Shown here: in pieces, positions 308 to 27,690 of the stretch
How the letters are laid out: every line of letters begins with the position of its first letter
How positions within the stretch are numbered: the first letter of the stretch is position 1
From: Octopus sinensis
Lineage: Eukaryota
Length of the DNA: 64,000 nucleotides
NCBI RefSeq assembly: GCF_006345805.1
Contig: NC_042997.1
Span: 79,546,001 to 79,610,000 of the forward strand
Direction: 5' to 3'
Notes under the pieces: model-generated
Seen by the model: only the letters and a program-made list of their open reading frames with translations
Told to the model about the DNA's origin: nothing
Databases searched by the model: none
Translations under genes and position numbers: made by a program

Positions 308-592
308 TTCCCTAAAACTTGAGAACTACACAACTAATTTCATTCAAATTTTACAGATGCCTTACTTATGGTCCGGGGAGTGTCATCGGCAAAAAAATTA
401 ACTTTTTGCCTAGGGCGAGCCCACAGCAATATCATATCTTCTCCACTACGATTCCCTAAACTCGAGAACTACACAACCAATTTCATTCAAATTTTACACA
501 TGCCTTACTTAGGGTCCATGTAATTTCATGGGCAAAAAATGTTCAACTTCTTGCCTAGAGAGAGCCCATTGCAATATCATATCTTCTCCACT
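308..592 (+). repeat. Two tandem ~144-bp units
   Basis: TTCCCTAAA...ATCATATCTTCTCCACTA occurs at 308-449 and 452-592. Confidence 0.85.
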
Positions 593-882
593 ATTTCAGT
601 ATTACGTGTTAAAAGTGAAACAAAAACATTTCTCTATTTTATGTCAGATACTTTCACTTTAACAATAAAAATAATAACAATTGAATTATATGTAGTAAGT
701 AATAATTAAAATCAAACTAAAGTATAATAAACTCGTAACATAAAAAAAGTAAAAATAGCAATTGGCATAAAATTGCATCAATGACTTGAACTTGAATAAG
801 TGGTTTCACATGAATGGGAATAAATCAAAAATAAAATTAGCGTGCAGAAATGGAATAGTCCAGATGGATAATAAAAAATTAA

Positions 883-938
883 ATTAAAGAAAAGACTATT
901 GTCTATAAAGTATACAATGTCGAGAAAAAAGGTCGCGT
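883..938 (+). pseudogene. 5' half-fragment of a fourth Tx1-like ORF1 (element D-left)
   Basis: Translates IKEKTIVYKVYNVEKKGRV. This matches RTIKYKVF (A), KTITYRTQ...LVRV (B) and KGIIYKTY (C), and stops where D-right (NMEESTFEKCLG) begins. Confidence 0.55.
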
Positions 939-2604
939 TTTTTTGCGCTCTGTAAAATTCGGTTAAAAAAGAAAAACAACAAAAAGTGAATTGTGGTTGC
1001 GGAATTGGAACGTCGGTTGGTGCGGTTTTGCGTCGCACTGGTTCTGTGCGTCGCACGTTTTCTGTTCGGGAGGCCGTTTTTCGGTCTGAGGCGACTATGA
1101 GCCGCCTCTACCAAACGGATGAGATGGAAGGGAGAAATTTCTCTGAAAATTCGTCGACATCTGAGGAGGAGTTGGCGGTGAAAAAAATGGAAAGCACCTA
1201 TGCAGGTATAACGAAGAAGTCAACAGAAAAAGAGATAGACCTGGCTAAGTTGACGGACTTCCAGGAGTTCATGAAGGAGGAGGAGAACGGAGAGGTTGAG
1301 CTGTTGCCTCTAGCAGGGCGCGGAGACTGGTTCCATCGTAGAACCATTAAATATAAAGTATTTATGAATGGAGGTAGAAAAATGGAAGTGATTAACATGG
1401 AAGCAATTGAAGAGGCTTTCAAACGGACAGGAGAAGAAATTGTGTACATGACAAAAGGATTAGAATATGGAACCATAACGGTACAATTTAAAAGTGAGAA
1501 AGCAGCCAGGAATATAGCAGCCAAGGTGGTGAGTACAGAAAAGTTTTACTTGTTCCCCTCGTATTTGAATAGAAGGACCACCTGAATTAGGGTGGAAGGA
1601 ATACCTCCACACCTAGAGGGCGAATTAATAACGGCTGCGGTTATCAAAGGAAATGAAGATAAAGTGGACATCCTCCACGCCATTATGAAATATGAAGGCG
1701 TGAGAGGTGCCACACTAGTAATGAACATACAGACGGAGGCGGAAGTTATAGAAAAGCTTACGGACAGTATAAAAACTGGAAATATTATTATGAGAGTGTG
1801 GGTGGAGGGTAGGGCGCCCAGGTGCTACAAGTGTGGCATGAGGGGTCACATAAGAGCCTACTGCCCTCCACCACTAAAGGAAAAAGAAAAGGAAATCGTC
1901 GCGGAAGCCCCAAAAGAGGAAGAAACCAAAGAGAACCAAAGGGAAAAAGAAACGACAGAAGAAGAGGAGATGCAACAAGAGTGGGAAGAAAGAAGAAAAA
2001 AGAGAAAAAGAAAGAAAAAGAAAAACTGTGCGAAGCCCCAACCCACCCCAACACCACCCGCACCCTCTGAATCCCACCCTTCCCCTGCAGACAGTGAACC
2101 CACCCGCTCCCCTCCAACAAGAAAACAAAAAAGAAAAATAACAATACAGACAGACAAGAGTTTGAAAACGAACCCAGGCCGAACATTTATATTGTGACTG
2201 AACAGAAAGAGGTTGAAAGGGTAATGGAGGAGTATGAATGGTATGAAATGGATGGGACCAGATATGCAGTGCTGGAAAAGAAGAATATAGATGAGTTTGT
2301 GTTGAGGTGTGAAAGGGAGAATTGGGAGGTGAAAGATACAAGAATGAGCGATGAATTCGTGGAATATATGGAGGACAGTTTCGGAGTAAGAATGGATATG
2401 GATGGTCTTCGTATTGGGAATGAACATTCAGGTGACAGTGAAAACAAAAGGACAGGTAAGTGATGCTGGCGGAGGGGGCCGTTAGCATCGCTTTCATATT
2501 ATCATTTTTTCATTTTCATTTGCTCATAAATTTAATCATATTGTTCTATGTCCCCCATGTTTTGTTATGTCCGCCATTCTTCGTAGCCCCTGGTGGGTAA
2601 TAAA
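938..2604 (+). mobile_element. Element A: ORF1-only Tx1/L1-like non-autonomous retroelement
   Basis: 5' TTTTTTGCG resembles the 5' end of element C. It has a gag-like ORF1 and no ORF2. Its 3' tail GCCC-CTGGT-GGGT-AATAAA is shared with B and C. Confidence 0.75.
1097..2463 (+). pseudogene. ORF1 of element A (RRM-like region + CCHC knuckle + basic linker + C-terminal domain), one in-frame TGA and one frameshift
   Basis: ATG at 1097. TGA at 1583-1585 is followed by an in-frame continuation (1592-2197) containing VEGRAPRCYKCGMRGHIRAYC. The C-terminal domain is in the -1 frame, open from 2098 to 2463. Confidence 0.8.
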
Positions 2605-2622
2605 GAAATAACATGGCGGAAA

Positions 2623-4538
2623 TCTACCCACGTGTGTTGTGAGTTATTTTGTATGTGAAAATTGGAAAAAAAAAACTGTAAAAAATTGTCAAAAAATTGA
2701 ATCACGCGAGGCGTTTGCCGCTGCGTGTTTGAACCTTTTATAGAAGGTGTGTCGACCCTCAAGTCATGGAGACTTACGCGGGGTTCGCCACAACAAAAAG
2801 TGACGAGTCTCTTAGAATAAAAGAAGTGTTCTTTAGAAAAGAACAATTGAAGGAATACGAGAAGTTCGTCAAAAGGGAGGGTGACAGCGTGAAGCTGGTC
2901 CCGCCTGTGGAAACAATAGAAGAGAGAAATAACAAGACGATAACGTATAGAACGCAAGATAGAAACACGAGAAAACTGGTGAGAGTGACGATTGAAGAAA
3001 TAGAGAAATGTCTGGGGGACATCATGAAAAAAGCGACTTTTGTAGACAGAGGAAAGAAATATGGTACGGTGGAGGTGAGATGCGCAACAAAGGAAGTGGC
3101 GGCCTCATTGGCTTCCACTGTCCTGAAAGCGGAAAATTTCACCATGTGGCCGACGTATAAAGGAAGACGAGGGGTACGGGTAAGAGTCCCAAAGGTGCCC
3201 CCAGATATTAAAACAGAAATGCTGGTAACAGCCATTATTGGGGCAGCAAAAGAGGAAGTAGAAATAGGGTCAATTAAGGAGACGAACGTTGTAAATTGGA
3301 AGGGATTCGGAGTAGAGTTGTGGCTGATGGCCACAATGGAAGGCATCGAAAGATTTCCCTTCCAAATAGAAATAGAAAACGAGAAAACAATTAGTGTAAT
3401 AGTGGAAGGCAGAAAACCGAATTGCTACCTGTGCGGATCAAGAGGGCACATAAAAAAGGAATGTCCGCTGTATGAATTCACAGCGGAGCAAAAAGAGACA
3501 CAAAGTGGAGAGAAGGAAAACGAACACGAAGGAAAGAACAGCGAAAACAAGGAAAAGGAAATAACGGAGAAACAACAAGAGAAGGGAAGTAACAGCGCAC
3601 TGAAGGAAAATGAAAACAAAGGGAAGAAGATAGTAGAAAAGGAGCAAAATTCACAGGGTGCAGAAGTAGTGGAGAAGGAGCCAAGGCAGAAGCAAGAGAA
3701 AGAAAAGGAAAGTACATTAAGGAAAGAGAAAAAGCAGGAAAAGAACAAGAGAAGGAACAGAACCAAGAGAAAGGAAAAGATGGTATGCAAAAAGGAAAAG
3801 AAACAACAGGAAAGGAACTTAAGGCACAGGGTAGAGAGACGGCAGACAAAGAGCCAAAAAGACAAGAGAAGGAAAAAGAAAGAAGAGAAAGCAAAAAGAG
3901 AGAAAGAGAGAAACCGAGGGAGGAGAAAAAAGAGGAAGTAAGTCCTAAGAGAAAAACTAGAGAAAACGTAGGTACGAATAGAAAATTCAAATACTATGGA
4001 ACGTTGATCCATCACAGGCACTGTGAGGAGATGGAAGATTTAATAAACGTAACAAACGGATATACGTGGGTCAGGATGGGCACCGAATGGAAAGAAACAG
4101 GTGTACTCGTCCACGAGAACGACGCCGAGGCGTTCATCGAGGCAGCTGGCAAGAACGTGTCAAAACATATGAAATGCCGACTTACAAGGTGGCCTCGAAC
4201 GATGGAAGTTTACTCAGATTTGGTAGACATAATGGAGTATATATAAAAGAAAAGGTATTGTGAAAACTTTAATTTGGAAATGATAAAAAGAACTTAAATT
4301 CTGAAAAAAAAAACAGAAATGTTGAACTTTGTAAAACTTTTGAAATGTATGTTGAAAATGTATAAAATGTTTTATTTGGAAAATATTGTTGACGAATAAA
4401 AAACAAATGACGAAATGTAACCGCTCGATTTCGGGGATCGAGTGGGCATTACACCACATTGTACAAACTTCATAATTCATTATTAATTTTCCCGATTGTA
4501 TTGTCCCATCTATGTAGCCCCTAGTGGGTAATAATAAA
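2623..4538 (+). mobile_element. Element B: ORF1-only Tx1/L1-like non-autonomous retroelement
   Basis: It has ORF1 only. The 3' end GATTGTATTGTCCCATCTATG..GCCC-CTAGT-GGGT-AATAATAAA is nearly identical to that of element C. Confidence 0.8.
2766..4246 (+). CDS. ORF1 of element B (gag-like, CCHC), C-terminal domain in -1 frame
   Basis: The 391-aa ORF contains YGTVEVR, PTYKGRR and VEGRKPNCYLCGSRGHIKKEC. Overlapping ORF 3785-4246 supplies a globular-looking C-terminus. Confidence 0.8.
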
Positions 4539-4769
4539 ACAACATGGAGGAAATCAATTTTTTGCGTTTATTAGTAAGTTGATATATTTTTGCTCTCGTA
4601 CTATTATCACTGTTATTATATACTGTTGGTCTACCTGTTTTGTCTATTGTTGTCTAACTGACGAAGTCAGCCTTCGCGCGAAGACTTCGCGTTGGTGTTC
4701 CCCCCTCCGTGGGGGAAAACTACAATTAATTTGGATTTACCAAAGGCTTGTTAAAGCCATTTGTTCAAG

Positions 4770-6147
4770 ATGGAGTCCCCCATCTCTTATTCGCCCGTGA
4801 CGAGCGAGGATGAATACCCGGCGTTGTCGCCAAGAAAAAAAGAGGCGTTGTCGCCAAGAAAAAAAGAGGCGTTGTCGCCGAAGAAAAAAGAGGCGGCGTC
4901 GCCCAAGAAAATGGAAAAACCAGGACCAGCATCAACTCCAGCAAAAAAATTCGCTGAAGTGGCTGGGAAAAAGATTAAAAATATAAATATAGAAAATTTT
5001 GAAAAATTTGCAGACTGTGTAAAAAAAGAAGGCACAGAAGTGACTGTAGCCACAAACATACAAAAACATGACGATATAGAAAAAAAAGGAATAATATATA
5101 AAACTTACGACACAACGACAAAAATGATCCAAAAAATCGAAGAAAAAAAAATAGAGTTTTGTCTAAAACCTTTTATGGATAAAATAACGTATATAAACAG
5201 AGGAAAAAGATACGGCACAGTGGAGGTGCGTTTTACTACGGAGGAGATAGCGAAAAAACTATCGATGGAGCCAATCAAAGCAGAAAACATTGTCTTGCTA
5301 CCATTGTATAAAGGAAAAAGGACGTCGAAAATTTCAATGAACAACATACCGCCAGAGGCAGATGCAGAATGTCTGGTGGCAGCAGTGATGGTAGGCCTGG
5401 AGGAAAAAATAAACATCCTCCAGGCCACAGTGGAGGAAGAGGAGTTTTGGAAAGGGCAGAAAATAGTGATAGCCATTCAGGCGGAGGTGCAAACACTGGA
5501 AGAAATTCCAGAAACGGTAAAGATTAGTGAAGACGAGAAAATAACAGTGTTCGTGGAGGGCAGGAAGCCGAGGTGCTTCGGCTGCGGCAAGAAGGGTCAT
5601 GTAAGGGCGGAATGCCAACCCCAACCCAAACCGCAGGAAGCACCTAAGCCAAGAGAAAAAGAAGATAATGTGTCACCAGAAGCAGCGTCGGACGGCCCAG
5701 AAGGGAAGACTGAAGGTGTGGAGGTGACGGTGACAGCAGAACCAGCGGCGGAGGAAAAAAAACAGAGGAAAAGATAAATGAGGAGGGGTGGGCAAAAATT
5801 ACCGGAAAAAAAAAAGAAAAACGGAAACCACCCCTCCCAGAGTAATTTTAAAAAAGAAAAGAGAGTCAATGAACTCGTATATGGCCGTAAAGGCAGCAAA
5901 TAGCAGACTCGGAAATGTGTTGGCAGCCATGGCCAAAGTGGAGAAAGTAGTGAAAAAAAACGACTTTGTAATTTACAGAATAGGCCGGAAGGATTACGGG
6001 CGGATAAAGCCAGAATTCTTCCATGACGTAGGCCCACTTAGATTGGATGTGACATCTCCACATATATTCGAGGGCCTAAGTCAGACTCCCCCACGAGGCC
6101 CAGAAAAAGAGTTAGAAGAACAAGAGAAAACCGAACCACTGATATAA
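4770..6147 (+). CDS. ORF1 of element C (gag-like, CCHC), interrupted at two A-homopolymers
   Basis: ATG at 4770; motif VEGRKPRCFGCGKKGHVRAEC. Adding one A to each of the runs at 5755-5762 and 5806-5815 joins 4770-5777, the linker TEEKINEEGWAKITGKKK and 5788-6147 into one ORF. Confidence 0.8.
4821..4910 (+). repeat. 24-bp in-frame tandem repeat (ALSPRKKE x3-4)
   Basis: GCGTTGTCGCCAAGAAAAAAAGAG units start at 4821, 4845 and 4869, with a variant at 4893. Confidence 0.9.
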
Positions 6148-6156
6148 AGGTAAGTA

Positions 6157-9100
6157 ATGGATTACATTTATGTTGGTTGTTTGAATGTGCGCGGCCTGGG
6201 AGCAGGCTGGAAGCAAGGTCGCTTCCTGCATGATATCAGGTCGCGTAATTTAGATGTTATTGTTGCTACAGAAACCCGGTTAGAGGGGCCAAGAGGTCTA
6301 CTCCCGCTGTTTGACGGCTACGAGGGTTTTTTCTCTCCTGGCAGTCCTACAGGCGGGAGTGGGGTGTTGGTCCTATTAAAAAGAAACCGGGTTTCTGAGA
6401 AAAAGTTAATTTTTGCAGATCCAGAAGGTAGGCTGGTCGTCATGGATTTGACGTTCAGTAATGGTAAAGTTATCAGACTGGTTGCAATTTACGCACCCAA
6501 CCATACAGGGCAAAGTGATTATTTTCGTGAACTAGAAAACTTTCTTGGTACTTCGCATTCATTAGTGGTGCTAGGAGACTTTAACACAATTTGCAAAGCG
6601 GATGTAGATTGTGTTGGCTCGCGTCCAGATAGAAAAGGCAACAGTGGCTTCATGGAACTGCTAAGCCGCTTTGAGCTAGCAGATCCTTATAGGCTGGAAT
6701 TTCCGAACGCTCCATTGTGGACATGGTCAAACAGCGACGGATCTTCCAGGTCATATTTAGATAGAATACTAATTAGAAAAGTAGACAGTAAAATAGCTAA
6801 GTGTCCACAGTTTTACCCGATCAGCTACAGTGATCATAAAATGGTCACTTGTAAGCTTGACATAGATAAGGTTAAAAATAGAGGATCCGGTTACTGGAAA
6901 CTTAATACGTCCCTTTTGGCGATTAAGGAGTACAAAGACCGGATTAGGAATATAATTCAGAGGGCACTATCTGGTACCATCATCAATAACAAATGGTGGT
7001 ACGCCCTGAAACGAGCCATCAAGTTTGAATCTATTAGATATAGCATAGGAGTAGTGGCTAGAGAGGCTAGAAGGGAAACTACTCTAGTTAAGGAATTAGA
7101 GGAAGCCATAAAAACTGGCTCTGCGGCTCAGGTGGCGTCCAAGAGACTGGTGTTAAACCAGCACCTCGAGGCCAAACACATGGGCTGCATTGTCAGGGCT
7201 AGAATCCGCCATATGGGATGTGAAGGAATCAACGCCGTGAGATGGGCCCGAGTGGTGGAAGCTCAGCATGGTAACGATGCCACGATTCGATCTTTGACGA
7301 ACCAACAAGGTGAGTTGATAAACGAACCCGAGGAGATGTGTGAGGCCTTTCAGGAGCACTTCGCTCAGCTTTTCGGTGAGTGCGGCGGACTGGATAGGAG
7401 GAGGGCCTTTACGGACCTACTCGACGGGCTGCCGCGCTTATCGGGGCGAGATGCGGAGGGCTGTGAAGGGCCAATCACGCCTGAGTTGGTGGTTGAAGCA
7501 ATGGCGGACTGCGGCGCGGGCAAGGCGCCGGGTTTGGATGGTCTACCCTATGAGTTATATAAGAGTATGCCAGACTTGTTCGGGCACCTACTGGCGGAGG
7601 TCTATGCAAACTGGCAGCAGAACGGGCTTATACCCAGATCTGTGCGCCGGGGAGTAGTGACTCTCGTCAGAAAGGACCCGAGCAAGGGGGAGTGCATTGA
7701 TAATTTCAGGCCCATCACTCTGCTAAACACAGAGTTGAAGATTTTGGCCAAAGTGTTATCGAAAAGATTGGCGCGTGTCGCGGATGGTCTGATCGGAGAG
7801 GCACAGACATGTGCCGTTCCGGGCAGATCCATTCAGGATAATCTCCATCTAATGCGGTACACTATAGAGGGGTTTAATAGTGATTCTGGCAAGGGTGGGG
7901 CACTGGTCCATTTAGACCAATCTAAAGCTTTTGATAGGGTCGACCATCGTTACCTGGTATCTGCCCTGGCACAGTTCGGGCTGAGCCTTGGCTTCCTCAG
8001 GTGGATTATCCAAATTTACGATAACATCGACTCGGTAGTTCGGGTGAACGGCTTCTTGTCGAAGCCGTTCAAAATCAAACGCTCGGTTCGTCAAGGGTGT
8101 CCGCTCTCCCCGCTTTTGTACGTGATGGCTCTTGAGCCATTACTGCGAAAACTGAGCGGCATCCCGAGACAGCCAGGTAATGGAAAATCAGTGTCAGCGT
8201 ACGCGGATGACATCACCATCATCGTAACCGAAATGGACCACCTATGTAAAGTAGGCAAAGCCATAGAGGTTTACGAGACGGTGACAGGAGCAAAAGTTAA
8301 TCGCGAAAAGTCAGTCGGCTTGCAACTCGGCACCTGGAGAGGCAAGTCGATGCCTCCTGACAGCGTCGTGGGACGTTGGACGGAGGGTCCGATTAAACTG
8401 CTAGGGGTCTGGTTCGGTCCAGACCTCCAAATAGAGAAGAATTGGGGCGAGGTAACGAGCAAGGTGGCTGCAGTAGCCAAGACCTGGTCTTGGCGGTGGC
8501 TATCCCTGAAAGGGAGGGCGGAGGTGGCCAATGTGTTTATCGCATCGGTTATCACCTACCGCCTTTCCGTCGTTCCTTGCCCTGATTCGTGGTTGATCAA
8601 GTTGGAAAGACAGCTCTTCTACTTCTTGTGGAAGGGCGGGAAACCACTTGTGAAACGCTCTACTTGCTGTCAACAACCGTTAAAGGGTGGGCTAGGGATG
8701 CCTTGGCTGATGATGCGCAGACATGCGCTGAGGTTAAGACATCTGTGGCTCTACCTGGATGGTGAACGGGTGTGGTCTTCGCTAGCAAAACTGATGTTTC
8801 CCAAGTTCACTAGTTTCGGTGGATGGGAAACCTGGCTGAATCGTAGATCGAAACTTGGTACTTGGTACACGGAGTGTCGCAAGGCTCTCCTGCTATTCCG
8901 TCGCTCGGGCAACGCCTGCGGTGGGGGTTCCACCACATTCTTCTATAGAGGGTTGGTAGAGGCGGAATGTGAAGATACCTTGGGGGAAACCCTAGGTCTC
9001 GACGATAATCAGCTGGCCAGTCTGTTCCGACGTACGTTCAAGCCGAGGACACTGGACAACTTCCAGAAGTCTCTGGCATGGCAATGCTACAGAGGAGCTC

Positions 9101-9552
9101 TACCTGTTCGGGATAAACTCGCAAGGCACGGTGGCCAAGACAGTCCGATATGTCCAAGATGCGGGCGGGATAGGGAAACCGTCCCGCACGCTATTGTTCA
9201 TTGTCCGGACGTGTCTGAGGTGTGGGTTTATGCCGAACAGCTGTTGTCAGGTACACGAAGAGTACAGCTGTCGACTGAGTCGATTACAAAAATTGACCCA
9301 CCGGATTTCCTCGTGAATGAAGGTAAGTTTCGTTTTCTCGTTGTAGTAGCAATTGCGAAAGAGGTGATATGGAAGACGAGAATGAAAGGTTTACAGTCAG
9401 GCAAGTTCATCTCCGGCCCTGGTTTGATGAATTATTTCATCTTTCACCTGAAAAGGAAGATAGGGCTGGAGAGAATATGCCTGACTAGGAGAGTGTATGA
9501 AGAACGATGGAAGGATGTAGCACGAAAGTTGCGAGTGAAAGATACAACATAA
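6157..9552 (+). CDS. ORF2p: AP-endonuclease + reverse transcriptase + C-terminal zinc finger (Tx1-like), intact, 1131 aa
   Basis: APE motifs LNVRGL, ATETRL, GDFN, YLDRILI, SDHKMV; linker YWKLNTSLL. RT motifs APGLDG, FRPITLLN, LDQSKAFDRVDH, RQGCPLSPLLY, YADDI, KLLGV. Zinc finger CPRC...HAIVHC. Confidence 0.97.
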   Translation: MDYIYVGCLNVRGLGAGWKQGRFLHDIRSRNLDVIVATETRLEGPRGLLPLFDGYEGFFSPGSPTGGSGVLVLLKRNRVSEKKLIFADPEGRLVVMDLTFSNGKVIRLVAIYAPNHTGQSDYFRELENFLGTSHSLVVLGDFNTICKADVDCVGSRPDRKGNSGFMELLSRFELADPYRLEFPNAPLWTWSNSDGSSRSYLDRILIRKVDSKIAKCPQFYPISYSDHKMVTCKLDIDKVKNRGSGYWKLNTSLLAIKEYKDRIRNIIQRALSGTIINNKWWYALKRAIKFESIRYSIGVVAREARRETTLVKELEEAIKTGSAAQVASKRLVLNQHLEAKHMGCIVRARIRHMGCEGINAVRWARVVEAQHGNDATIRSLTNQQGELINEPEEMCEAFQEHFAQLFGECGGLDRRRAFTDLLDGLPRLSGRDAEGCEGPITPELVVEAMADCGAGKAPGLDGLPYELYKSMPDLFGHLLAEVYANWQQNGLIPRSVRRGVVTLVRKDPSKGECIDNFRPITLLNTELKILAKVLSKRLARVADGLIGEAQTCAVPGRSIQDNLHLMRYTIEGFNSDSGKGGALVHLDQSKAFDRVDHRYLVSALAQFGLSLGFLRWIIQIYDNIDSVVRVNGFLSKPFKIKRSVRQGCPLSPLLYVMALEPLLRKLSGIPRQPGNGKSVSAYADDITIIVTEMDHLCKVGKAIEVYETVTGAKVNREKSVGLQLGTWRGKSMPPDSVVGRWTEGPIKLLGVWFGPDLQIEKNWGEVTSKVAAVAKTWSWRWLSLKGRAEVANVFIASVITYRLSVVPCPDSWLIKLERQLFYFLWKGGKPLVKRSTCCQQPLKGGLGMPWLMMRRHALRLRHLWLYLDGERVWSSLAKLMFPKFTSFGGWETWLNRRSKLGTWYTECRKALLLFRRSGNACGGGSTTFFYRGLVEAECEDTLGETLGLDDNQLASLFRRTFKPRTLDNFQKSLAWQCYRGALPVRDKLARHGGQDSPICPRCGRDRETVPHAIVHCPDVSEVWVYAEQLLSGTRRVQLSTESITKIDPPDFLVNEGKFRFLVVVAIAKEVIWKTRMKGLQSGKFISGPGLMNYFIFHLKRKIGLERICLTRRVYEERWKDVARKLRVKDTT

Positions 9553-9796
9553 ATGTAATACCAAGCGCAACCAAAAGTATCAGTGGGGAGGCGGGGCTCG
9601 TGGGGTCCGAGCTAAACCCGCACCCACTCCACCCGTAATGTCTTCCGGTCTGTCCCATCATTCGATTTCTGTCCATTTATTGTAATTCATGAAAATTTTT
9701 AAATTCGATTTATTGTAAAAACCCATTCGTGTGTCTGACCCCATCATCAGATTGTATTGTCCCATCTATGTTCGCCCCTTATGGGTAATAATAAAA

Positions 9797-10110
9797 CAAC
9801 ATGGAGGAAAGCACCTTCGAAAAGTGTCTTGGTGCGACTATGAAAGTTATCTAATCAGAGGCGGTAAACTCGCCACAATAGAAGCAAGGTTCGAGTCAAC
9901 GGAGCGTGCAAAGGAGTACTCGACTCGAACTTGCAAAGTGGAAATATTCTATTTTTACCTTTATATCTGGGACGTAGGACGTCCCGGAAAAAATTTAAAA
10001 TGCCCCCCCCCCCCCGAAGTAGAGGTAGGTTGGATTGTAGCCACACTTCTATACAAGAGGGAGGACAAGATACAATTGATCGAAATTACAAGAGACGGGC
10101 TAACAATTCC
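9797..10110 (+). pseudogene. 3' part of the fourth Tx1-like ORF1 (element D-right), frameshifted and truncated before the CCHC
   Basis: Read across frames: NMEESTFEKCLGATMK / SYLIRGGKLATIEARFESTERAKEYS / QSGNILFLPLYLGRRTS / PPEVEVGWIVATLL. This is collinear with ORF1 of B and C. Confidence 0.8.
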
Positions 10111-10561
10111 AGTCTGTTATATATTTTGAGTATTGTTATCACTAGCGATATCAAGATATAACTTTGTATTTTGTATTTTATGTGTAGATGTATATACATA
10201 GATGTACATGTAATATGTACACATATATATACACATATATACATGCACTAGCACTATGACCCGGCAACGACGGGTCTTTAATGCTAGTATTATAATAACT
10301 ATACATACATGGGTACTTACAACATGGATACTTACAAAATGTGTGTGAGCGTATATATGTATGTATGTATAATATTTTAAGGCTCCATTACTCAAATTCC
10401 ATTCACAAAGCTTCAAAACTGTATTTATAGAAAATTAAATTGCATAAATATTACAAGCCGACCGTATTCTCATTCCCTATCAATAACCTACACTTGCATA
10501 TGCGGGAGTGGATCAGTTAGTGCATTTATGCATAATTTTTTCCGTTATTCCATTTTTAATA

Positions 10562-11494: not shown

Positions 11495-12269
11495 GGATCG
11501 TTACCTTTTGACCGACAAATTTAAAAAATAATTTTTTGTAACTAAACACTTTCAAACTGCGAACACTGGTAGAATGTGTCATACAAAACATGTTTTACTC
11601 GCAGAATTTTTGAGAAAAACTTATATTTACGAAGTTATTTCACGTTTATGTTCTCGTATTTCGGTAATTTCAACCAATGACGTGTATTCAGTTGAATAAA
11701 ATTACTGCCGTTGTTTGTCAACAACAACTATCGGTGGTGTATTTTTCGTTTGTCACTGTTATTTATGACATCGTTCGTGCGTTTGTACTGGTTTTAAGGT
11801 TTGGGGTTAGGGTTAGGGTTAGGGTTTTAGGGTTAGGGTTAGGGGTAGGGTTTTAGGTTTTAGGGTTAGGGTGTTAGGGTTAGGGTTTTAGGTTTTAGGG
11901 TTAGGGTGTTAGGGTTAGGGTTTTAGGGTTAGGGTTAGGGTTATAAGGTCAGGGTTAGGGTTTTAGGGTAAGGGTTAGGGTTAGGGTTTTAGGGTTAGGG
12001 TTGTCATAAATAACAGTGACAAACGAAAAATACACCGCCAGAAGTTCTTGTTGACAAACAACGGCAGTAATTTTATTCAGCTGAATACACGTTGAAATTA
12101 CCGAAATTTTACAACTTTAACGTGGAATAACTTCGTAAATATGTTTTTCTCAAAAATGCTAAGAGTAAAACATGTTTTATATGACACATTCTACCAGTGT
12201 CCGAAGTTTGAAAGTGTTTAGTTACAAGAAATTATTTTTTTAAATCTATAGGTCAAAAGGTAAAGATCC
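11495..12269. mobile_element. Foldback/MITE-like element with ~270-bp inverted arms around a telomeric-repeat core
   Basis: Arm 11495-11770 (GGATCGTTACCTTTTGACC...TTATGACA) is the imperfect reverse complement of 12002-12269 (TGTCATAA...GGTCAAAAGGTAAAGATCC). Confidence 0.85.
11795..12002 (+). repeat. Interstitial telomeric repeat (TTAGGG)n with TTTTAGGG variants
   Basis: About 200 bp of GGGTTA units read directly. Confidence 0.95.
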
Positions 12270-13074: not shown

Positions 13075-13250
13075 GCAAGCAGTTTCGTGGTACGGGGTAA
13101 ATTGATTACATCGACCCCATTTATCAACTGGTACTTATTTTATGAAAGGCAAAGTCGACCTCGGCGGAATTTGAGCTCAGAACATAAGACGGATGAAATG
13201 CCGCTAAGCATTTTGCCCGGAGTGCTAACGATTCTGCCAGCTCGCCGCCT
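13075..13250 (-). mobile_element. tRNA-derived SINE family 2 (Nin/Deu-like core)
   Basis: Reverse complement of GGCGGCGAGCTGGCAGAATCGTTAGCAC...GAGGTCGACTTTGCCTTTCAT...AAGTACCAG; the same motif recurs at 30.3, 30.6, 36.7, 38.6, 45.4, 48.2 and 61.4 kb. Confidence 0.75.
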
Positions 13251-23953: not shown

Positions 23954-25227
23954 TCAGGTCATCCTATAAGTTCTGTCCGAATTTTGAATAAAGAAAACAA
24001 GTGATCAAATGTTATATTTAATTGAAATTTAATCATCAATATATTTTTGCTGATTATCTATGACTTGTTTCCATCTATTTACAAGCCTTTTAATCCCATC
24101 AATGTAAAACTCTTTTGGTTTTAAAGAGAACAACTCTGAAATGTCAGTTTCGACCTCCTCCTGGCTTGCGAAAGTTATGTCCCCCAAATGATTCTGTAAA
24201 CTACGAAACAAATGGTATTCTGAAGGAGCAAGTTCGGGAGAATAAGGTAGCTGAAGAATTTTTTCCCACCCAAGCTCTTCGATTTTCTGTGGTGTTATTT
24301 TTGCAGTGTGGAGTCGCGCATTGTCCTGATGAAACATCATTCCTTTTCGATTCATTAAAGTGGGTCTTTTTTCTTCAAAGCTTGATTCAAACGCTCTAAT
24401 TGCTGACAGTAGACTTGAGCATTAATTGTTGCTTTAGGTGGTAACAATTCAAAGTGAACTACTCCTTTACAATCCCCCCAGATTGAAAGAAGAACCTTTT
24501 TCCTATGAAGTTCCCTTCTCGGTTGTGGTTGAGCCTTTTCCCTTTTACCAAGCCACTGTTTACGACGTTTAACATTTCGATAGCAGATCCATTTTTCGCC
24601 ACCAGTCTATCAAAAATGGGTGAAATGAGTTCGTGAGAATGGAGGGAAGAGCAGATATCAACTCGGGATTTGCGGTTGCTTTCGAACAATTCATGAGGCA
24701 CCCATTTTCCAAGTGTAGGAACCTTTCCAGGTTGTTGAAGATGACGATGAACAGTCGTATGGCTTGAACTAAGCTTTATTTCCAATTCTTCAACTGAAAA
24801 CGCAGAATTTTCTACAAGTAATGCCTCATGGAGCTTATCATCAAACTCAACTGGACGTCCTGTTTGATCTTCAATTTCAAGGCTGAAATCTCCACTTCTG
24901 AATTTTGCAAACCATCTTCTGCAAGTTCTTTCATTCCAGCATTCTTTCCCATAAACTGAGTGTATGTTTCGAATCGTTTCGGCTGCAGAGTTTCCTTTTT
25001 CGTACTCATAAATCATTATGTGCCTCAAATGCTCTTTGGATACTTCCATGTTAGAAAGGGTTTTAATCAAAGAAACTTTAACTGTATTATTCTGTAAAAT
25101 AATATTTAATTAGTTTAAATGTACACAAATGCATTAAAATAATTTTAATTCCATTAGATATTCTAAAATACTATTAAATTTCCTTCAATTTAAAAAAAGG
25201 TAAAATCGAACAAAACTTATGGGATGA

Positions 25228-25670: not shown

Positions 25671-25679
25671 TGTTGACCA

Positions 25680-25718
25680 TATTATATATATAGATATATA
25701 TATATATAATATATATAT

Positions 25719-25773
<55 letters not shown>

Positions 25774-25810
25774 TATATATATGTATATATATATATATAT
25801 AATAATATAG

Positions 25811-25900
<90 letters not shown>

Positions 25901-25944
25901 TATGTATATATATATGTATATATGTATATATATATATTATATGT

Positions 25945-26026
<82 letters not shown>

Positions 26027-26035
26027 GTATATATG

Positions 26036-26084
<49 letters not shown>

Positions 26085-26155
26085 ATGTATATATGTATAT
26101 ATATATATATGTACATATATATATGTATATATATATATATGTATATATATATGTC

Positions 26156-26192
<37 letters not shown>

Positions 26193-26897
26193 GTATATAT
26201 TATATATATATGTATATTATATATATGTATAATATATATGTATATCTATATATATATATATGTATATATATATATGTATATATATATGTATATATATATA
26301 TATATATATATGTATATGTATATATATATGTATATATATATGTATATATTATATATATATATTGTATATGTTATATATATATATGTATATATATATGTAT
26401 ATATATATATATTATATATATGTATATATATATGTATATATATTATATATATGTATATATATATATGTATATATATTGTATATATATATATGTATATATA
26501 TATATGTATATATATATATGTATATATATATATTGATATATATATATGTATATATATATATGTATATATATAATGTATATATATATATATATATGTATAT
26601 AATATATAGATATAATATAATACATATATATATGTATATAATAGTATGTATATATATAATGTATGTATATATATATATATGGTATATAGATATATATGTA
26701 TATATATATGTATATATATATTATATATATATGTATATATATATATGTATATTATATATATATATGTATATATATGTATATATATTATAATATATATGTA
26801 TATATATATATATGTATATATATATGTATATATATATAATATATGTATATATATATATATGTATAGTATATATATATTGATATATATATATAGTATG

Positions 26898-26930
<33 letters not shown>

Positions 26931-26945
26931 GTATATATATATATG

Positions 26946-27006
<61 letters not shown>

Positions 27007-27028
27007 GTATATAGATATATATATGTTG

Positions 27029-27066
<38 letters not shown>

Positions 27067-27470
27067 TGTTATATATATATATGTATATATATATGTGTAT
27101 ATATATATATATATGTATTATATATATATGTATATATATATATGATATATATTGTCTATATATATATATATATACGTATATAATATATAGATGTTATATA
27201 TATATATATGTATATATATAATATATGTATATATATATATATATATGTATATATATGATATATAGTATAATATGTATTATATGTATATATATGTATATAT
27301 ATATATATATGTATATATATGTATATATATCTGTATATATATGTATATATATATGTTATATATGTATATATATGTATATATATTATATATATATTATGTA
27401 TAGATATATGTATATATATTGTATCTGTATATATATATGTAATATATATGTATATGTATATATATATGTG

Positions 27471-27502
<32 letters not shown>

Positions 27503-27657
27503 GTATGTATATATATATATATGTGTAGATATATATATATTATTATGTATCTATATATATATATATGTAATATATATATATTATATTATGTATATATATA
27601 TTATATATATGTATATATATATATATGTATATACTATATATCGATATGTATATATAT

Positions 27658-27690
<33 letters not shown>
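25680..27690. repeat. ~2-kb (TA)n/TATATG-variant microsatellite
   Basis: Almost exclusively alternating T/A with interspersed G or extra T. Confidence 0.97.

What the first reader, a model, noticed from the sequence alone, without database searches (positions are those of the whole stretch)
883..9830. The target site looks like ORF1 coding sequence of a related element that the array has split in two
Left of A, 883-938 reads KTIVYKVYNVEKKGRV. Right of C, 9798 onward reads NMEESTFEKCLGATMK. Joined, they give YKVYNVEKKGRV-NMEESTFEKCL, which aligns without gaps to C (YKTYDTTTKMIQKIEEKKIEFCL) and closely to B (YRTQ...LVRVTIEEIEKCLG). The junction 15-mer is therefore in-frame N-M-E-E codons of a fourth ORF1 (D). 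A carries a near match at the homologous codons (TAACATGGAAGCAA, 1393-1406). Inference: the endonuclease targets a conserved stretch of sibling ORF1 genes, i.e. transposon-on-transposon parasitism. This would provide a self-renewing safe haven and knock out competitors. No TSD copy is visible at the A-left junction, which implies a small target deletion there.
Basis: partly seen in the sequence, partly recalled or inferred. Interest (0 to 1): 0.85.

Follow-up and report, generated by a model that had tools for sequence, protein, structure and literature searches.

The report
Octopus LINEs stacked at one site
Three different octopus LINE-type retrotransposons (two lacking the enzyme gene) inserted one after another at exactly the same nick inside the long-dead ORF1 of a fourth, re-copying a 13-15-base piece of it at two of the insertions; this is a neat "multiple insertion" array, and it does not show that the enzyme seeks out rival transposons' genes.

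Summary
Window 886-930 and 9798-10126 are two halves of a decayed ORF1 pseudogene (D, 66 bits against an ORF1 profile), split by three head-to-tail L1/Tx1-type elements: A 931-2609, B 2625-4540 (both ORF2-less) and C 4554-9797. One correction: codons "GRV" (931-939) belong to A's 5' end, so D lacks about 3 codons at the left junction.

The 13-mer AACATGGAGGAAA is D's own N-M-E-E codons, repeated as a target-site duplication (TSD): 13 bp for C, 15 bp for B. It is not part of the element terminus. A SINE in the same window with the same tail ends at ...GAAAT|TATATA. Relatives in O. sinensis and O. vulgaris end at ...AAAAC or ...GAAAT next to unrelated DNA.

The inferred ORF1-specific endonuclease is not supported. 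Relatives make 13-18-bp TSDs at unrelated, non-ORF1 sequences. One of them carries an endonuclease 95 % identical to C's. Sixteen sibling ORF1s are uninterrupted at the homologous codons.

Head-to-tail arrays are this family's general habit (three further loci in two species). The best reading is repeated insertion at one TSD-preserved site, the known "double insertion" class. Why this site was re-used remains open, because only one locus from the source genome was available.

The parts
886..930 (+). D-left: remnant of ORF1 of an old fourth lineage (KEKTIVYKVYNVEKK), profile positions 83-97.
   Evidence: The boundary at 930/931 comes from A's 5' homology to the O. sinensis A-like copy.
931..2609 (+). 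Element A, an ORF2-less internal-deletion derivative. 5'UTR 931-1096. ORF1 1097-2197, with an in-frame TGA at 1583-1585. C-terminal ORF1 part 2194-2463, in another frame. It retains the ORF2 start region AGGTAAGTGATG (2454-2465). The 3' tail ends GTGGGTAATAAAGAAAT at 2609.
   Evidence: An orthologous ORF2-less A-like copy lies at L004 2499-4185.
2610..2624 (+). T1: a copy of the D target (AACATGGCGGAAATC). It is the left TSD copy of B.
2625..4540 (+). Element B, ORF2-less. 5'UTR 2625-2765. ORF1 2766-3941, with a CCHC knuckle. C-terminal part 3785-4246. It keeps the first 4 ORF2 codons and then a stop (ATG GAG TAT ATA TAA, 4232-4246). The tail ends GTGGGTAATAATAAAAC at 4540.
4541..4553 (+). T2: an exact copy of the D target (AACATGGAGGAAA). 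It is the left TSD copy of C. Together with C's first two bases (TC, 4554-4555) it forms the right TSD copy of B.
   Evidence: The TC assignment comes from comparing 5' ends: C TCAATTTTTTGCG, A TCGCGTTTTTTTGCG, L004 'next' TTCATTTTTGACGCG.
4554..9797 (+). Element C, the ORF2-bearing member. 5'UTR to 4769. ORF1 4770-5777. C-terminal ORF1 part 5788-6147, frame-shifted relative to ORF1. ORF2 6157-9552, an open 1131-aa reading frame with APE, RT and zf-RVT domains. 3'UTR 9553-9797, ending ...GGGTAATAATAAAAC.
   Evidence: 92 % nt identical to L004 copy C#1.
9798..10126 (+). D-right. It begins with T3 (9798-9810, AACATGGAGGAAA = N-M-E-E codons). The ORF1 remnant then continues through profile position 197 across three frames.
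38533..38770 (-). tRNA-derived SINE copy carrying the same 3' tail as element A (GTGGGTAGTAAAGAAAT), followed by (TA)n and not by the 13-mer. It serves as a same-genome control for where the terminus ends.

Best explanation
Window 931-9797 holds three independent insertions of three different L1/Tx1-type non-LTR elements, made by target-primed reverse transcription. A and B are ORF1-only deletion derivatives, presumably mobilised in trans. C carries an open ORF2.

All three used the same bottom-strand nick, immediately 5' of AACATGG, inside an old decayed ORF1 fragment of a fourth lineage (D). The 13-mer is D's native N-M-E-E coding sequence. Because the staggered second nick falls 13-15 bp downstream, re-insertion re-duplicated that sequence: 13 bp for C, and 15 bp for B. 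B's TSD includes C's first two bases, so B arrived after C. This produced A-T-B-T-C-T-D. The leftmost junction was resolved with a small target deletion (about 9 bp) instead of a duplication.

The structure itself is shown. The cause of the site re-use is inferred. A TSD preserves the target, so a favoured site stays available, and this family habitually stacks head-to-tail at or within a few bases of resident copies' termini. An ORF1-directed endonuclease specificity is not needed, and the relatives argue against it.
For: - Element identity: ORF2 has Exo_endo_phos, RVT_1 and zf-RVT domains. The ORF1s of A, B and C are only 30-38 % identical, so these are independent elements and not duplicates.
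- D is real and collinear across the array: 66.4 bits, profile positions 83-197.
- The 13-mer is credible native ORF1 sequence. Window A has AAC ATG GAA GCA, the O. sinensis A-like copy has AAC ATG GAA TGG, and the O. sinensis '5th' copy has AAA ATG GAA GAG AAA at the homologous codons.
- The 13-mer is not part of the element terminus. A SINE in the window with the same tail ends ...AAAGAAAT|TATATA. Sister-species copies end ...AAAAC...AAATC or ...GAAAT and are followed by other sequences.
- The family makes TSDs of the right size. L006 has 18 bp, the L004 A-like copy 16 bp, a 243-bp copy in L007 about 15 bp, and L004 C#2 13 bp.
- Arrays are the family habit. L004 has 5 members of at least 3 types. 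L005 has at least 3 copies and L008 at least 4. L004 C#2 sits within 5 nt of C#1's 3' end, flanked by a 13-nt repeat.
- The mechanism class is documented. Tandem TEs that keep the target site in the junction arise by double insertion at preferred sites, as in the R1 array with 33-nt rDNA duplications between copies (PMC5932611).
Against: - Only one locus from the source genome could be examined. No empty site and no intact D copy was available.
- Re-use of one nick three times means the site was strongly favoured, and the downstream 13-mer is the only context certainly common to all three events. A real preference for this sequence therefore cannot be excluded.
- The first hit landing inside a sibling's ORF1 is left as coincidence.
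- In L004 the array members also abut or enter sibling 5'UTR sequence. That hints at some attraction to siblings that this explanation does not specify mechanistically.
- The O. vulgaris arrays show direct 3'-to-5' abutment with no TSD, and copies sharing a frameshift. They grew at least partly by unequal exchange, so they are weaker support for repeated insertion.
Confidence: 0.6

Rival explanations
1. The ORF2 endonuclease is sequence-specific for AACATGGAGGAAA, a conserved stretch of sibling ORF1 genes. The family homes into rivals' ORF1, regenerates its target as a TSD and so builds arrays.
For: Three independent insertions used the same nick 5' of the 13-mer. The 13-mer is in-frame ORF1 sequence, and similar codons exist in sibling ORF1s. 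The L1/Tx1 group is known to contain target-specific members, including Tx1L, which inserts into another transposon (background knowledge; compare the papers listed).
Against: Relatives' TSDs are unrelated in sequence and lie outside ORF1. A copy with a 95.4 % identical endonuclease domain has a different flank. A same-tail SINE in the same window sits in (TA)n. Sixteen sibling ORF1s, some matching the 16-mer at 12/16, are uninterrupted at that site. D was heavily decayed, so 'competitor knock-out' has no support.
Confidence: 0.12
2. The 13-15-mer travels with the RNA. AATAAA lies at the very end of the element, so transcripts must run about 15-20 nt into the flank. This co-transcribed tag anneals to the nicked target and guides re-insertion to sites carrying the same tag, in the manner of R1, R2, SART or TRAS.
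For: AATAAA is terminal, and a CA cleavage dinucleotide lies 16 nt downstream at T2 and T3. A's private variant ATGGCGGAAAT is complementary (10/11) to ATGTCCGCCAT in A's own 3'UTR. All DNA copies lack poly(A), so reverse transcription starts internally.
Against: A, B and C are different lineages and would each need a source copy already sitting at the same tag. Solitary relatives carry no foreign tag between terminus and TSD. The predicted folds are not better than shuffles, with z-scores of -1.7, 0.0 and -0.9.
Confidence: 0.1
3. The array was not built here. It was formed in one event by reverse-transcriptase template jumping between RNAs, or it was copied as a block from a master array by read-through transcription or segmental duplication.
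For: Head-to-tail junctions without a TSD exist in the O. vulgaris arrays. The same junction 13-mer, AACCCGACAGGAC, occurs in arrays on two chromosomes.
Against: D-derived sequence sits between every pair of members in the window. Template jumps or block copying from elsewhere would not supply it. The nested TSD logic (B's TSD includes C's first two bases) indicates sequential events.
Confidence: 0.05

Closest known systems
Tandem TEs formed by double or multiple insertion at one target site (the R1 array on the D. melanogaster X chromosome; McGurk & Barbash 2018, PMC5932611)
   Same: Head-to-tail non-LTR elements separated by copies of the target-site duplication. The target is preserved in each junction, which allows re-insertion. 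Arrays can later expand by unequal exchange, as in L008, where copies share a frameshift.
   Different: Here three different lineages share one site (ORF1 30-38 % identical), two of them ORF2-less. The host sequence is a dead sibling ORF1, not rDNA. No strict target specificity is evident in relatives.
Tx1L in Tx1D (Xenopus) and other target-specific L1/Tx1-group LINEs (Keno, Mutsu, Kibi, Koshi); recalled from the literature
   Same: An APE-type LINE with RT and a C-terminal zinc finger, and an ORF1 with a CCHC knuckle, lying inside another transposable element. A distant ORF2 hit is annotated 'Transposon TX1'.
   Different: In those families essentially all copies occupy one defined target sequence. 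Here relatives and the SINE partner occupy unrelated sequences, with TSDs of 13-18 bp.
ORF1-only non-autonomous LINE partners (mammalian HAL1; Drosophila HeT-A alongside TART/TAHRE); recalled from the literature
   Same: A and B keep ORF1 but lack ORF2, and lie in head-to-tail arrays with an ORF2-bearing relative. The A-type is ORF2-less in O. sinensis as well.
   Different: The arrays are not at chromosome ends: the sister-species loci are chromosome-internal by their coordinates. Insertions are endonuclease-type with TSDs. A and B retain the ORF2 start codon region, so they are simple internal deletions.
LINE-SINE partnership through a shared 3' tail (Ohshima/Okada model; the octopus tRNA-derived SINEs); recalled from the literature
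   Same: A tRNA-derived SINE in the window carries the same terminal GTGGGTAGTAAAGAAAT as element A and has no poly(A).
   Different: This is only a by-product here. It serves as a control showing where the terminus ends.

Membership tests
APE-type non-LTR retrotransposon of the L1/Tx1 kind | ORF2 with an N-terminal AP-endonuclease domain, a reverse transcriptase and a C-terminal zinc-binding motif | tested here: met
   Exo_endo_phos 1.9e-13, RVT_1 2.5e-31 and zf-RVT 1.5e-08 in window 6157-9552.
APE-type non-LTR retrotransposon of the L1/Tx1 kind | ORF1 with a CCHC zinc knuckle | tested here: met
   zf-CCHC 2e-05 in B. The C-x2-C-x4-H-x4-C pattern is invariant in the A/B/C alignment.
APE-type non-LTR retrotransposon of the L1/Tx1 kind | Phylogenetic placement of the RT within the Tx1 subgroup | not tested
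   The only evidence is a 26 % identical hit carrying the name 'Transposon TX1'. No tree was built.
APE-type non-LTR retrotransposon of the L1/Tx1 kind | Poly(A) or A-rich 3' tail | tested here: not met
   All copies end ...GGGTAATAATAAAAC or ...TAAAGAAAT and are directly followed by flank.
   Four relatives' TSDs are unrelated in sequence to the 13-mer and to each other. The same-window SINE lies in (TA)n. Caveat: only one LINE locus comes from the source species.
   Needs recombinant APE domain and oligonucleotide substrates.
Tandem TE array by multiple insertion at one site | A target-site copy is preserved in every tandem junction | tested here: met
   The 13-mer lies at 2610 (1 mismatch), 4541 and 9798.
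Tandem TE array by multiple insertion at one site | Members are independent insertions and not duplicates | tested here: met
   ORF1 identity is 30-38 %. Sizes and 5'UTRs differ. B's TSD includes C's first two bases.
Tandem TE array by multiple insertion at one site | An outer TSD copy on the far left of the array | tested here: not met
   There is no copy 5' of A. The best candidate at 916-930 matches only 9/15, and about 3 D codons are missing. This is interpreted as a target deletion at one 5' junction.

The most novel reading that the evidence does not exclude
The family, including its ORF1-only partners and the SINE, may actively home to resident family members. It would do so either by re-nicking at the terminus/TSD boundary of earlier insertions or by recognising sibling sequence (ORF1 here, 5'UTR in O. 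sinensis L004). The head-to-tail arrays seen in three octopus species would then be a self-made landing pad, a non-telomeric analogue of HeT-A/TART stacking.
Probability: 0.2. Interest if true: 0.7.

Novelty: new member of a known kind. Interest (0 to 1): 0.35.

Why it matters
The locus is a clean natural example of three different LINE lineages, two of them ORF1-only, re-using one staggered nick and reiterating its TSD. This is the first step of the 'double insertion to satellite' route described in Drosophila, here in a cephalopod.

It also shows that this octopus family commonly forms arrays, that it has ORF2-less partner lineages conserved between species, and that it has a SINE partner. 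These points are useful for annotating octopus genomes.

It does not provide evidence for a new targeting strategy against rival transposons. That idea would matter if a whole-genome survey of the source species revived it.

Tried and rejected
- Looking up the window's ORF2 and B ORF1 by exact sequence found nothing. The source genome is not in the collection.
- The ORF2 homologue search gave only distant relatives on short contigs, at most 58 % identical. Their 3' ends were uninformative.
- Scanning metagenome and viral contigs for the 3' terminus plus the 13-mer gave 0 hits.
- I first read the 13-mer as a fixed 3' terminus of the elements, because it lies within a block conserved in A, B and C. 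I rejected this after the sister-species copies and the same-window SINE showed the terminus ends before it.
- I first read the O. vulgaris junction ACCCGAYAGGAC as a TSD. I rejected this because the same sequence occurs in arrays on two chromosomes and is absent after the last copy, so it is the element's 5' end.
- An RNA stem pairing the 13-mer with upstream 3'UTR: the folds are not better than shuffles, and only A shows a good arm.
- 916-930 as a diverged left TSD copy matches only 9/15. That is too diverged compared with the other copies.
- Rfam gave no hits in the window.
- L007 is cluttered by a mariner and other TEs and gave only one short copy with a TSD.
Full report
**What is in the window.** Window 931-9797 holds three head-to-tail non-LTR retrotransposons on the + strand.
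- C (4554-9797) has an ORF1 and an open 1131-aa ORF2 with AP-endonuclease, reverse-transcriptase and zf-RVT domains.
- A (931-2609) and B (2625-4540) have an ORF1 but no ORF2. Both keep the ORF2 initiation region. A has AGGTAAGTGATG where C has AGGTAAGTAATG. B has ATG GAG TAT ATA TAA where C has ATG GAT TAC ATT TAT. They are therefore internal-deletion derivatives.
- The three ORF1s are only 30-38 % identical, so these are three lineages and not duplicates.
- Only the last ~70 nt are conserved between them, ending GGGTAATAA(TA/AG)AAA(C/T).

**Checking the observation.**
- A profile of the A, B and C ORF1s, searched against the six-frame translation of the whole window, finds outside the array only the array's two flanks at E below 1. 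They are collinear: the left flank covers positions 83-97, and the right flank covers 102-118, then 119-197 (E 4.6e-7) and 145-174 in other frames.
- A frame-corrected join scores 66.4 bits and is gapless across the junction when the 12 nt are included. It scores 57.7 bits with a 4-residue gap when they are not.
- D is therefore a real, much-decayed ORF1 fragment (at least 3 frameshifts and 2 stops, truncated on both sides), and the array splits it.
- The 13-mer is exact at 4541 and 9798 and has one mismatch at 2610.

**A boundary correction.** An ORF1 profile search identified the organism as an octopus and gave chromosome-scale loci from O. sinensis and O. vulgaris.
- The O. sinensis A-like element is also ORF2-less and is flanked by a clean 16-bp TSD, GGATGTGATATAATGA.
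- Its 5' end, GGTCGTGTTATTTTTACGCG, aligns with window 931 onward, GGTCGCGTTTTTTTGCGC.
- The 23-residue gapless join is in part an accident.

The evidence goes the other way.
- In O. sinensis and O. vulgaris the same tails end ...AATAAAAC...AAATC or ...AAAGAAAT and are followed by other sequences.
- In the window itself, a tRNA-derived SINE at 38533-38770 (-) carries A's tail, GTGGGTAGTAAAGAAAT, followed by (TA)n.
- The family makes TSDs of matching size: 18 bp around the solitary L006 copy in ordinary DNA, 16 bp around the L004 A-like copy, about 15 bp around a 243-bp copy in L007, and 13 bp around L004 C#2.
- Uninterrupted sibling ORF1s carry N-M-E (AAC ATG GAA, A-type in two species) or K-M-E-E (AAA ATG GAA GAG) at the homologous codons. 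AAC ATG GAG GAA is therefore credible native D sequence.
- Conclusion: the three copies are D's target sequence, reiterated as a TSD.

**Order of events.** The 'TC' after the first two copies matches the start of C's 5'UTR. Compare C TCAATTTTTTGCG, A TCGCGTTTTTTTGCG and L004 'next' TTCATTTTTGACGCG. C's TSD is therefore 13 bp. B's is 15 bp (the 13-mer plus C's TC), so B arrived after C. A's 3' end abuts the same nick. The leftmost junction has no TSD copy and shows a ~9-bp target loss.

**Testing the interpretation.** An ORF1-specific endonuclease predicts the same target in close relatives. That is not seen.
- The O. sinensis copy C#1 is 92 % identical to C in nucleotides, and its endonuclease domain is 95.4 % identical. 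It is followed by AACTGAATACTCGTCAT.
- The other TSDs are unrelated in sequence and lie outside ORF1.
- All 16 sibling ORF1s examined are uninterrupted at the homologous site.
- D is far more decayed than A, B or C, so 'knocking out a competitor' has no support.

**What recurs is stacking.**
- L004 is a five-member array of at least three element types. L005 has at least 3 copies and L008 at least 4 tandem copies.
- L004 C#2 lies within 5 nt of C#1's 3' end.
- Several L004 junctions fall in sibling 5'UTR sequence. One stretch matches C#2's 5'UTR at 21/23, with 0 of 500 shuffles reaching that score.
- The O. vulgaris arrays have no TSD between copies, and copies share a frameshift, so they expanded at least partly by unequal exchange.

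**Mechanism and comparison with known systems.** The structure is the 'double insertion' class. A TSD preserves the target, a favoured site can be hit again, and the target copy remains in each tandem junction. Examples are the R1 array with 33-nt rDNA duplications between copies, and the P-element and jockey dimers of McGurk & Barbash (PMC5932611).
- Here it happened three times, with three lineages that share a 3' tail and therefore, presumably, one ORF2 protein.
- Shown: the anatomy, the TSD nature of the 13-mer, and the absence of strict target specificity in relatives.
- Inferred: why this nick was re-used.
- The downstream 13-mer is the only context certainly common to all three events, so a real preference for it cannot be excluded.
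- Equally, the family's general stacking suggests that resident termini attract new insertions.
- With only one locus from the source genome, these two possibilities cannot be separated.

**Verdict.**
The split ORF1, the TSD reading and the left-junction deletion hold. ORF1-directed targeting does not.
- Novelty: a new member of a known kind.
- Interest is modest. A whole-genome flank survey in the source species is the decisive and easy next step.

Noticed in passing
window 11800-12002: A degenerate interstitial (TTAGGG)n tract of about 30 units on the + strand, about 1.7 kb to the right of the D fragment. Any connection with the array is unknown.
   Followed up: no
window 38533-38770 (-); also SINE heads at 13155, 30329, 30578, 36729, 45442 and 48241: Several tRNA-derived SINE copies share a head but have different tails. 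Only the 38.5-kb copy carries this LINE family's tail, which implies a LINE-SINE partnership through the shared 3' end.
   Followed up: partly
window 2194-2463, 3785-4246, 5788-6147: In A, B and C the conserved C-terminal part of ORF1 lies in a different frame from the main ORF1. The switch falls in A-rich runs. In the O. vulgaris proteins P0053 and P0054 the two parts are one ORF. The cause could be mutation, homopolymer assembly error or programmed frameshifting.
   Followed up: no
window 2454-2461 and 6148-6155: A perfect 5'-splice-site-like AGGTAAGT lies immediately before the ORF2 ATG. It is conserved between A and C.
   Followed up: no
window 2548-2577 vs 2610-2623: A's 3'UTR contains two arms complementary to A's own variant of the junction 15-mer: ATGTCCCCCATGTT and ATGTCCGCCAT against AACATGGCGGAAAT. 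The second arm matches the private C variant. The folds are not significant.
   Followed up: partly
L005 and L008 (O. vulgaris, two chromosomes): Arrays on different chromosomes share the same 13-nt junction AACCCGACAGGAC between the 3' end and GTTAC.... It may be an old TSD captured as the subfamily's 5' end. L008 copies 2 and 3 share an ORF1 frameshift, and the array period is about 5.27-5.29 kb, which indicates amplification by unequal exchange.
   Followed up: partly
window 4820-4911; L004 9590-9700: A 24-nt tandem repeat in the N-terminal ORF1 of C encodes KKKEALSP-type units. The copy number differs between species.
   Followed up: no
window 24459-25070 (-): A Mos1/mariner transposase N-terminal remnant (HTH_48, 7.6e-22). 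It lies next to a 2-kb (AT)n tract at 25679-27689.
   Followed up: partly
window 315-593: A 143-bp repeat unit, 1.9 copies at 86 % identity, lies about 300 bp to the left of D.
   Followed up: no
TSD right boundaries: window 9807-9813, L004 4196-4201, L006 14862-14868: Three of the four clear TSDs end in AAT(G/C)(G)A/C (AAATCA|C, TAATGA|C, AAATGGC|T). This may hint at a preference of the second-strand nick. The sample is far too small to judge.
   Followed up: no
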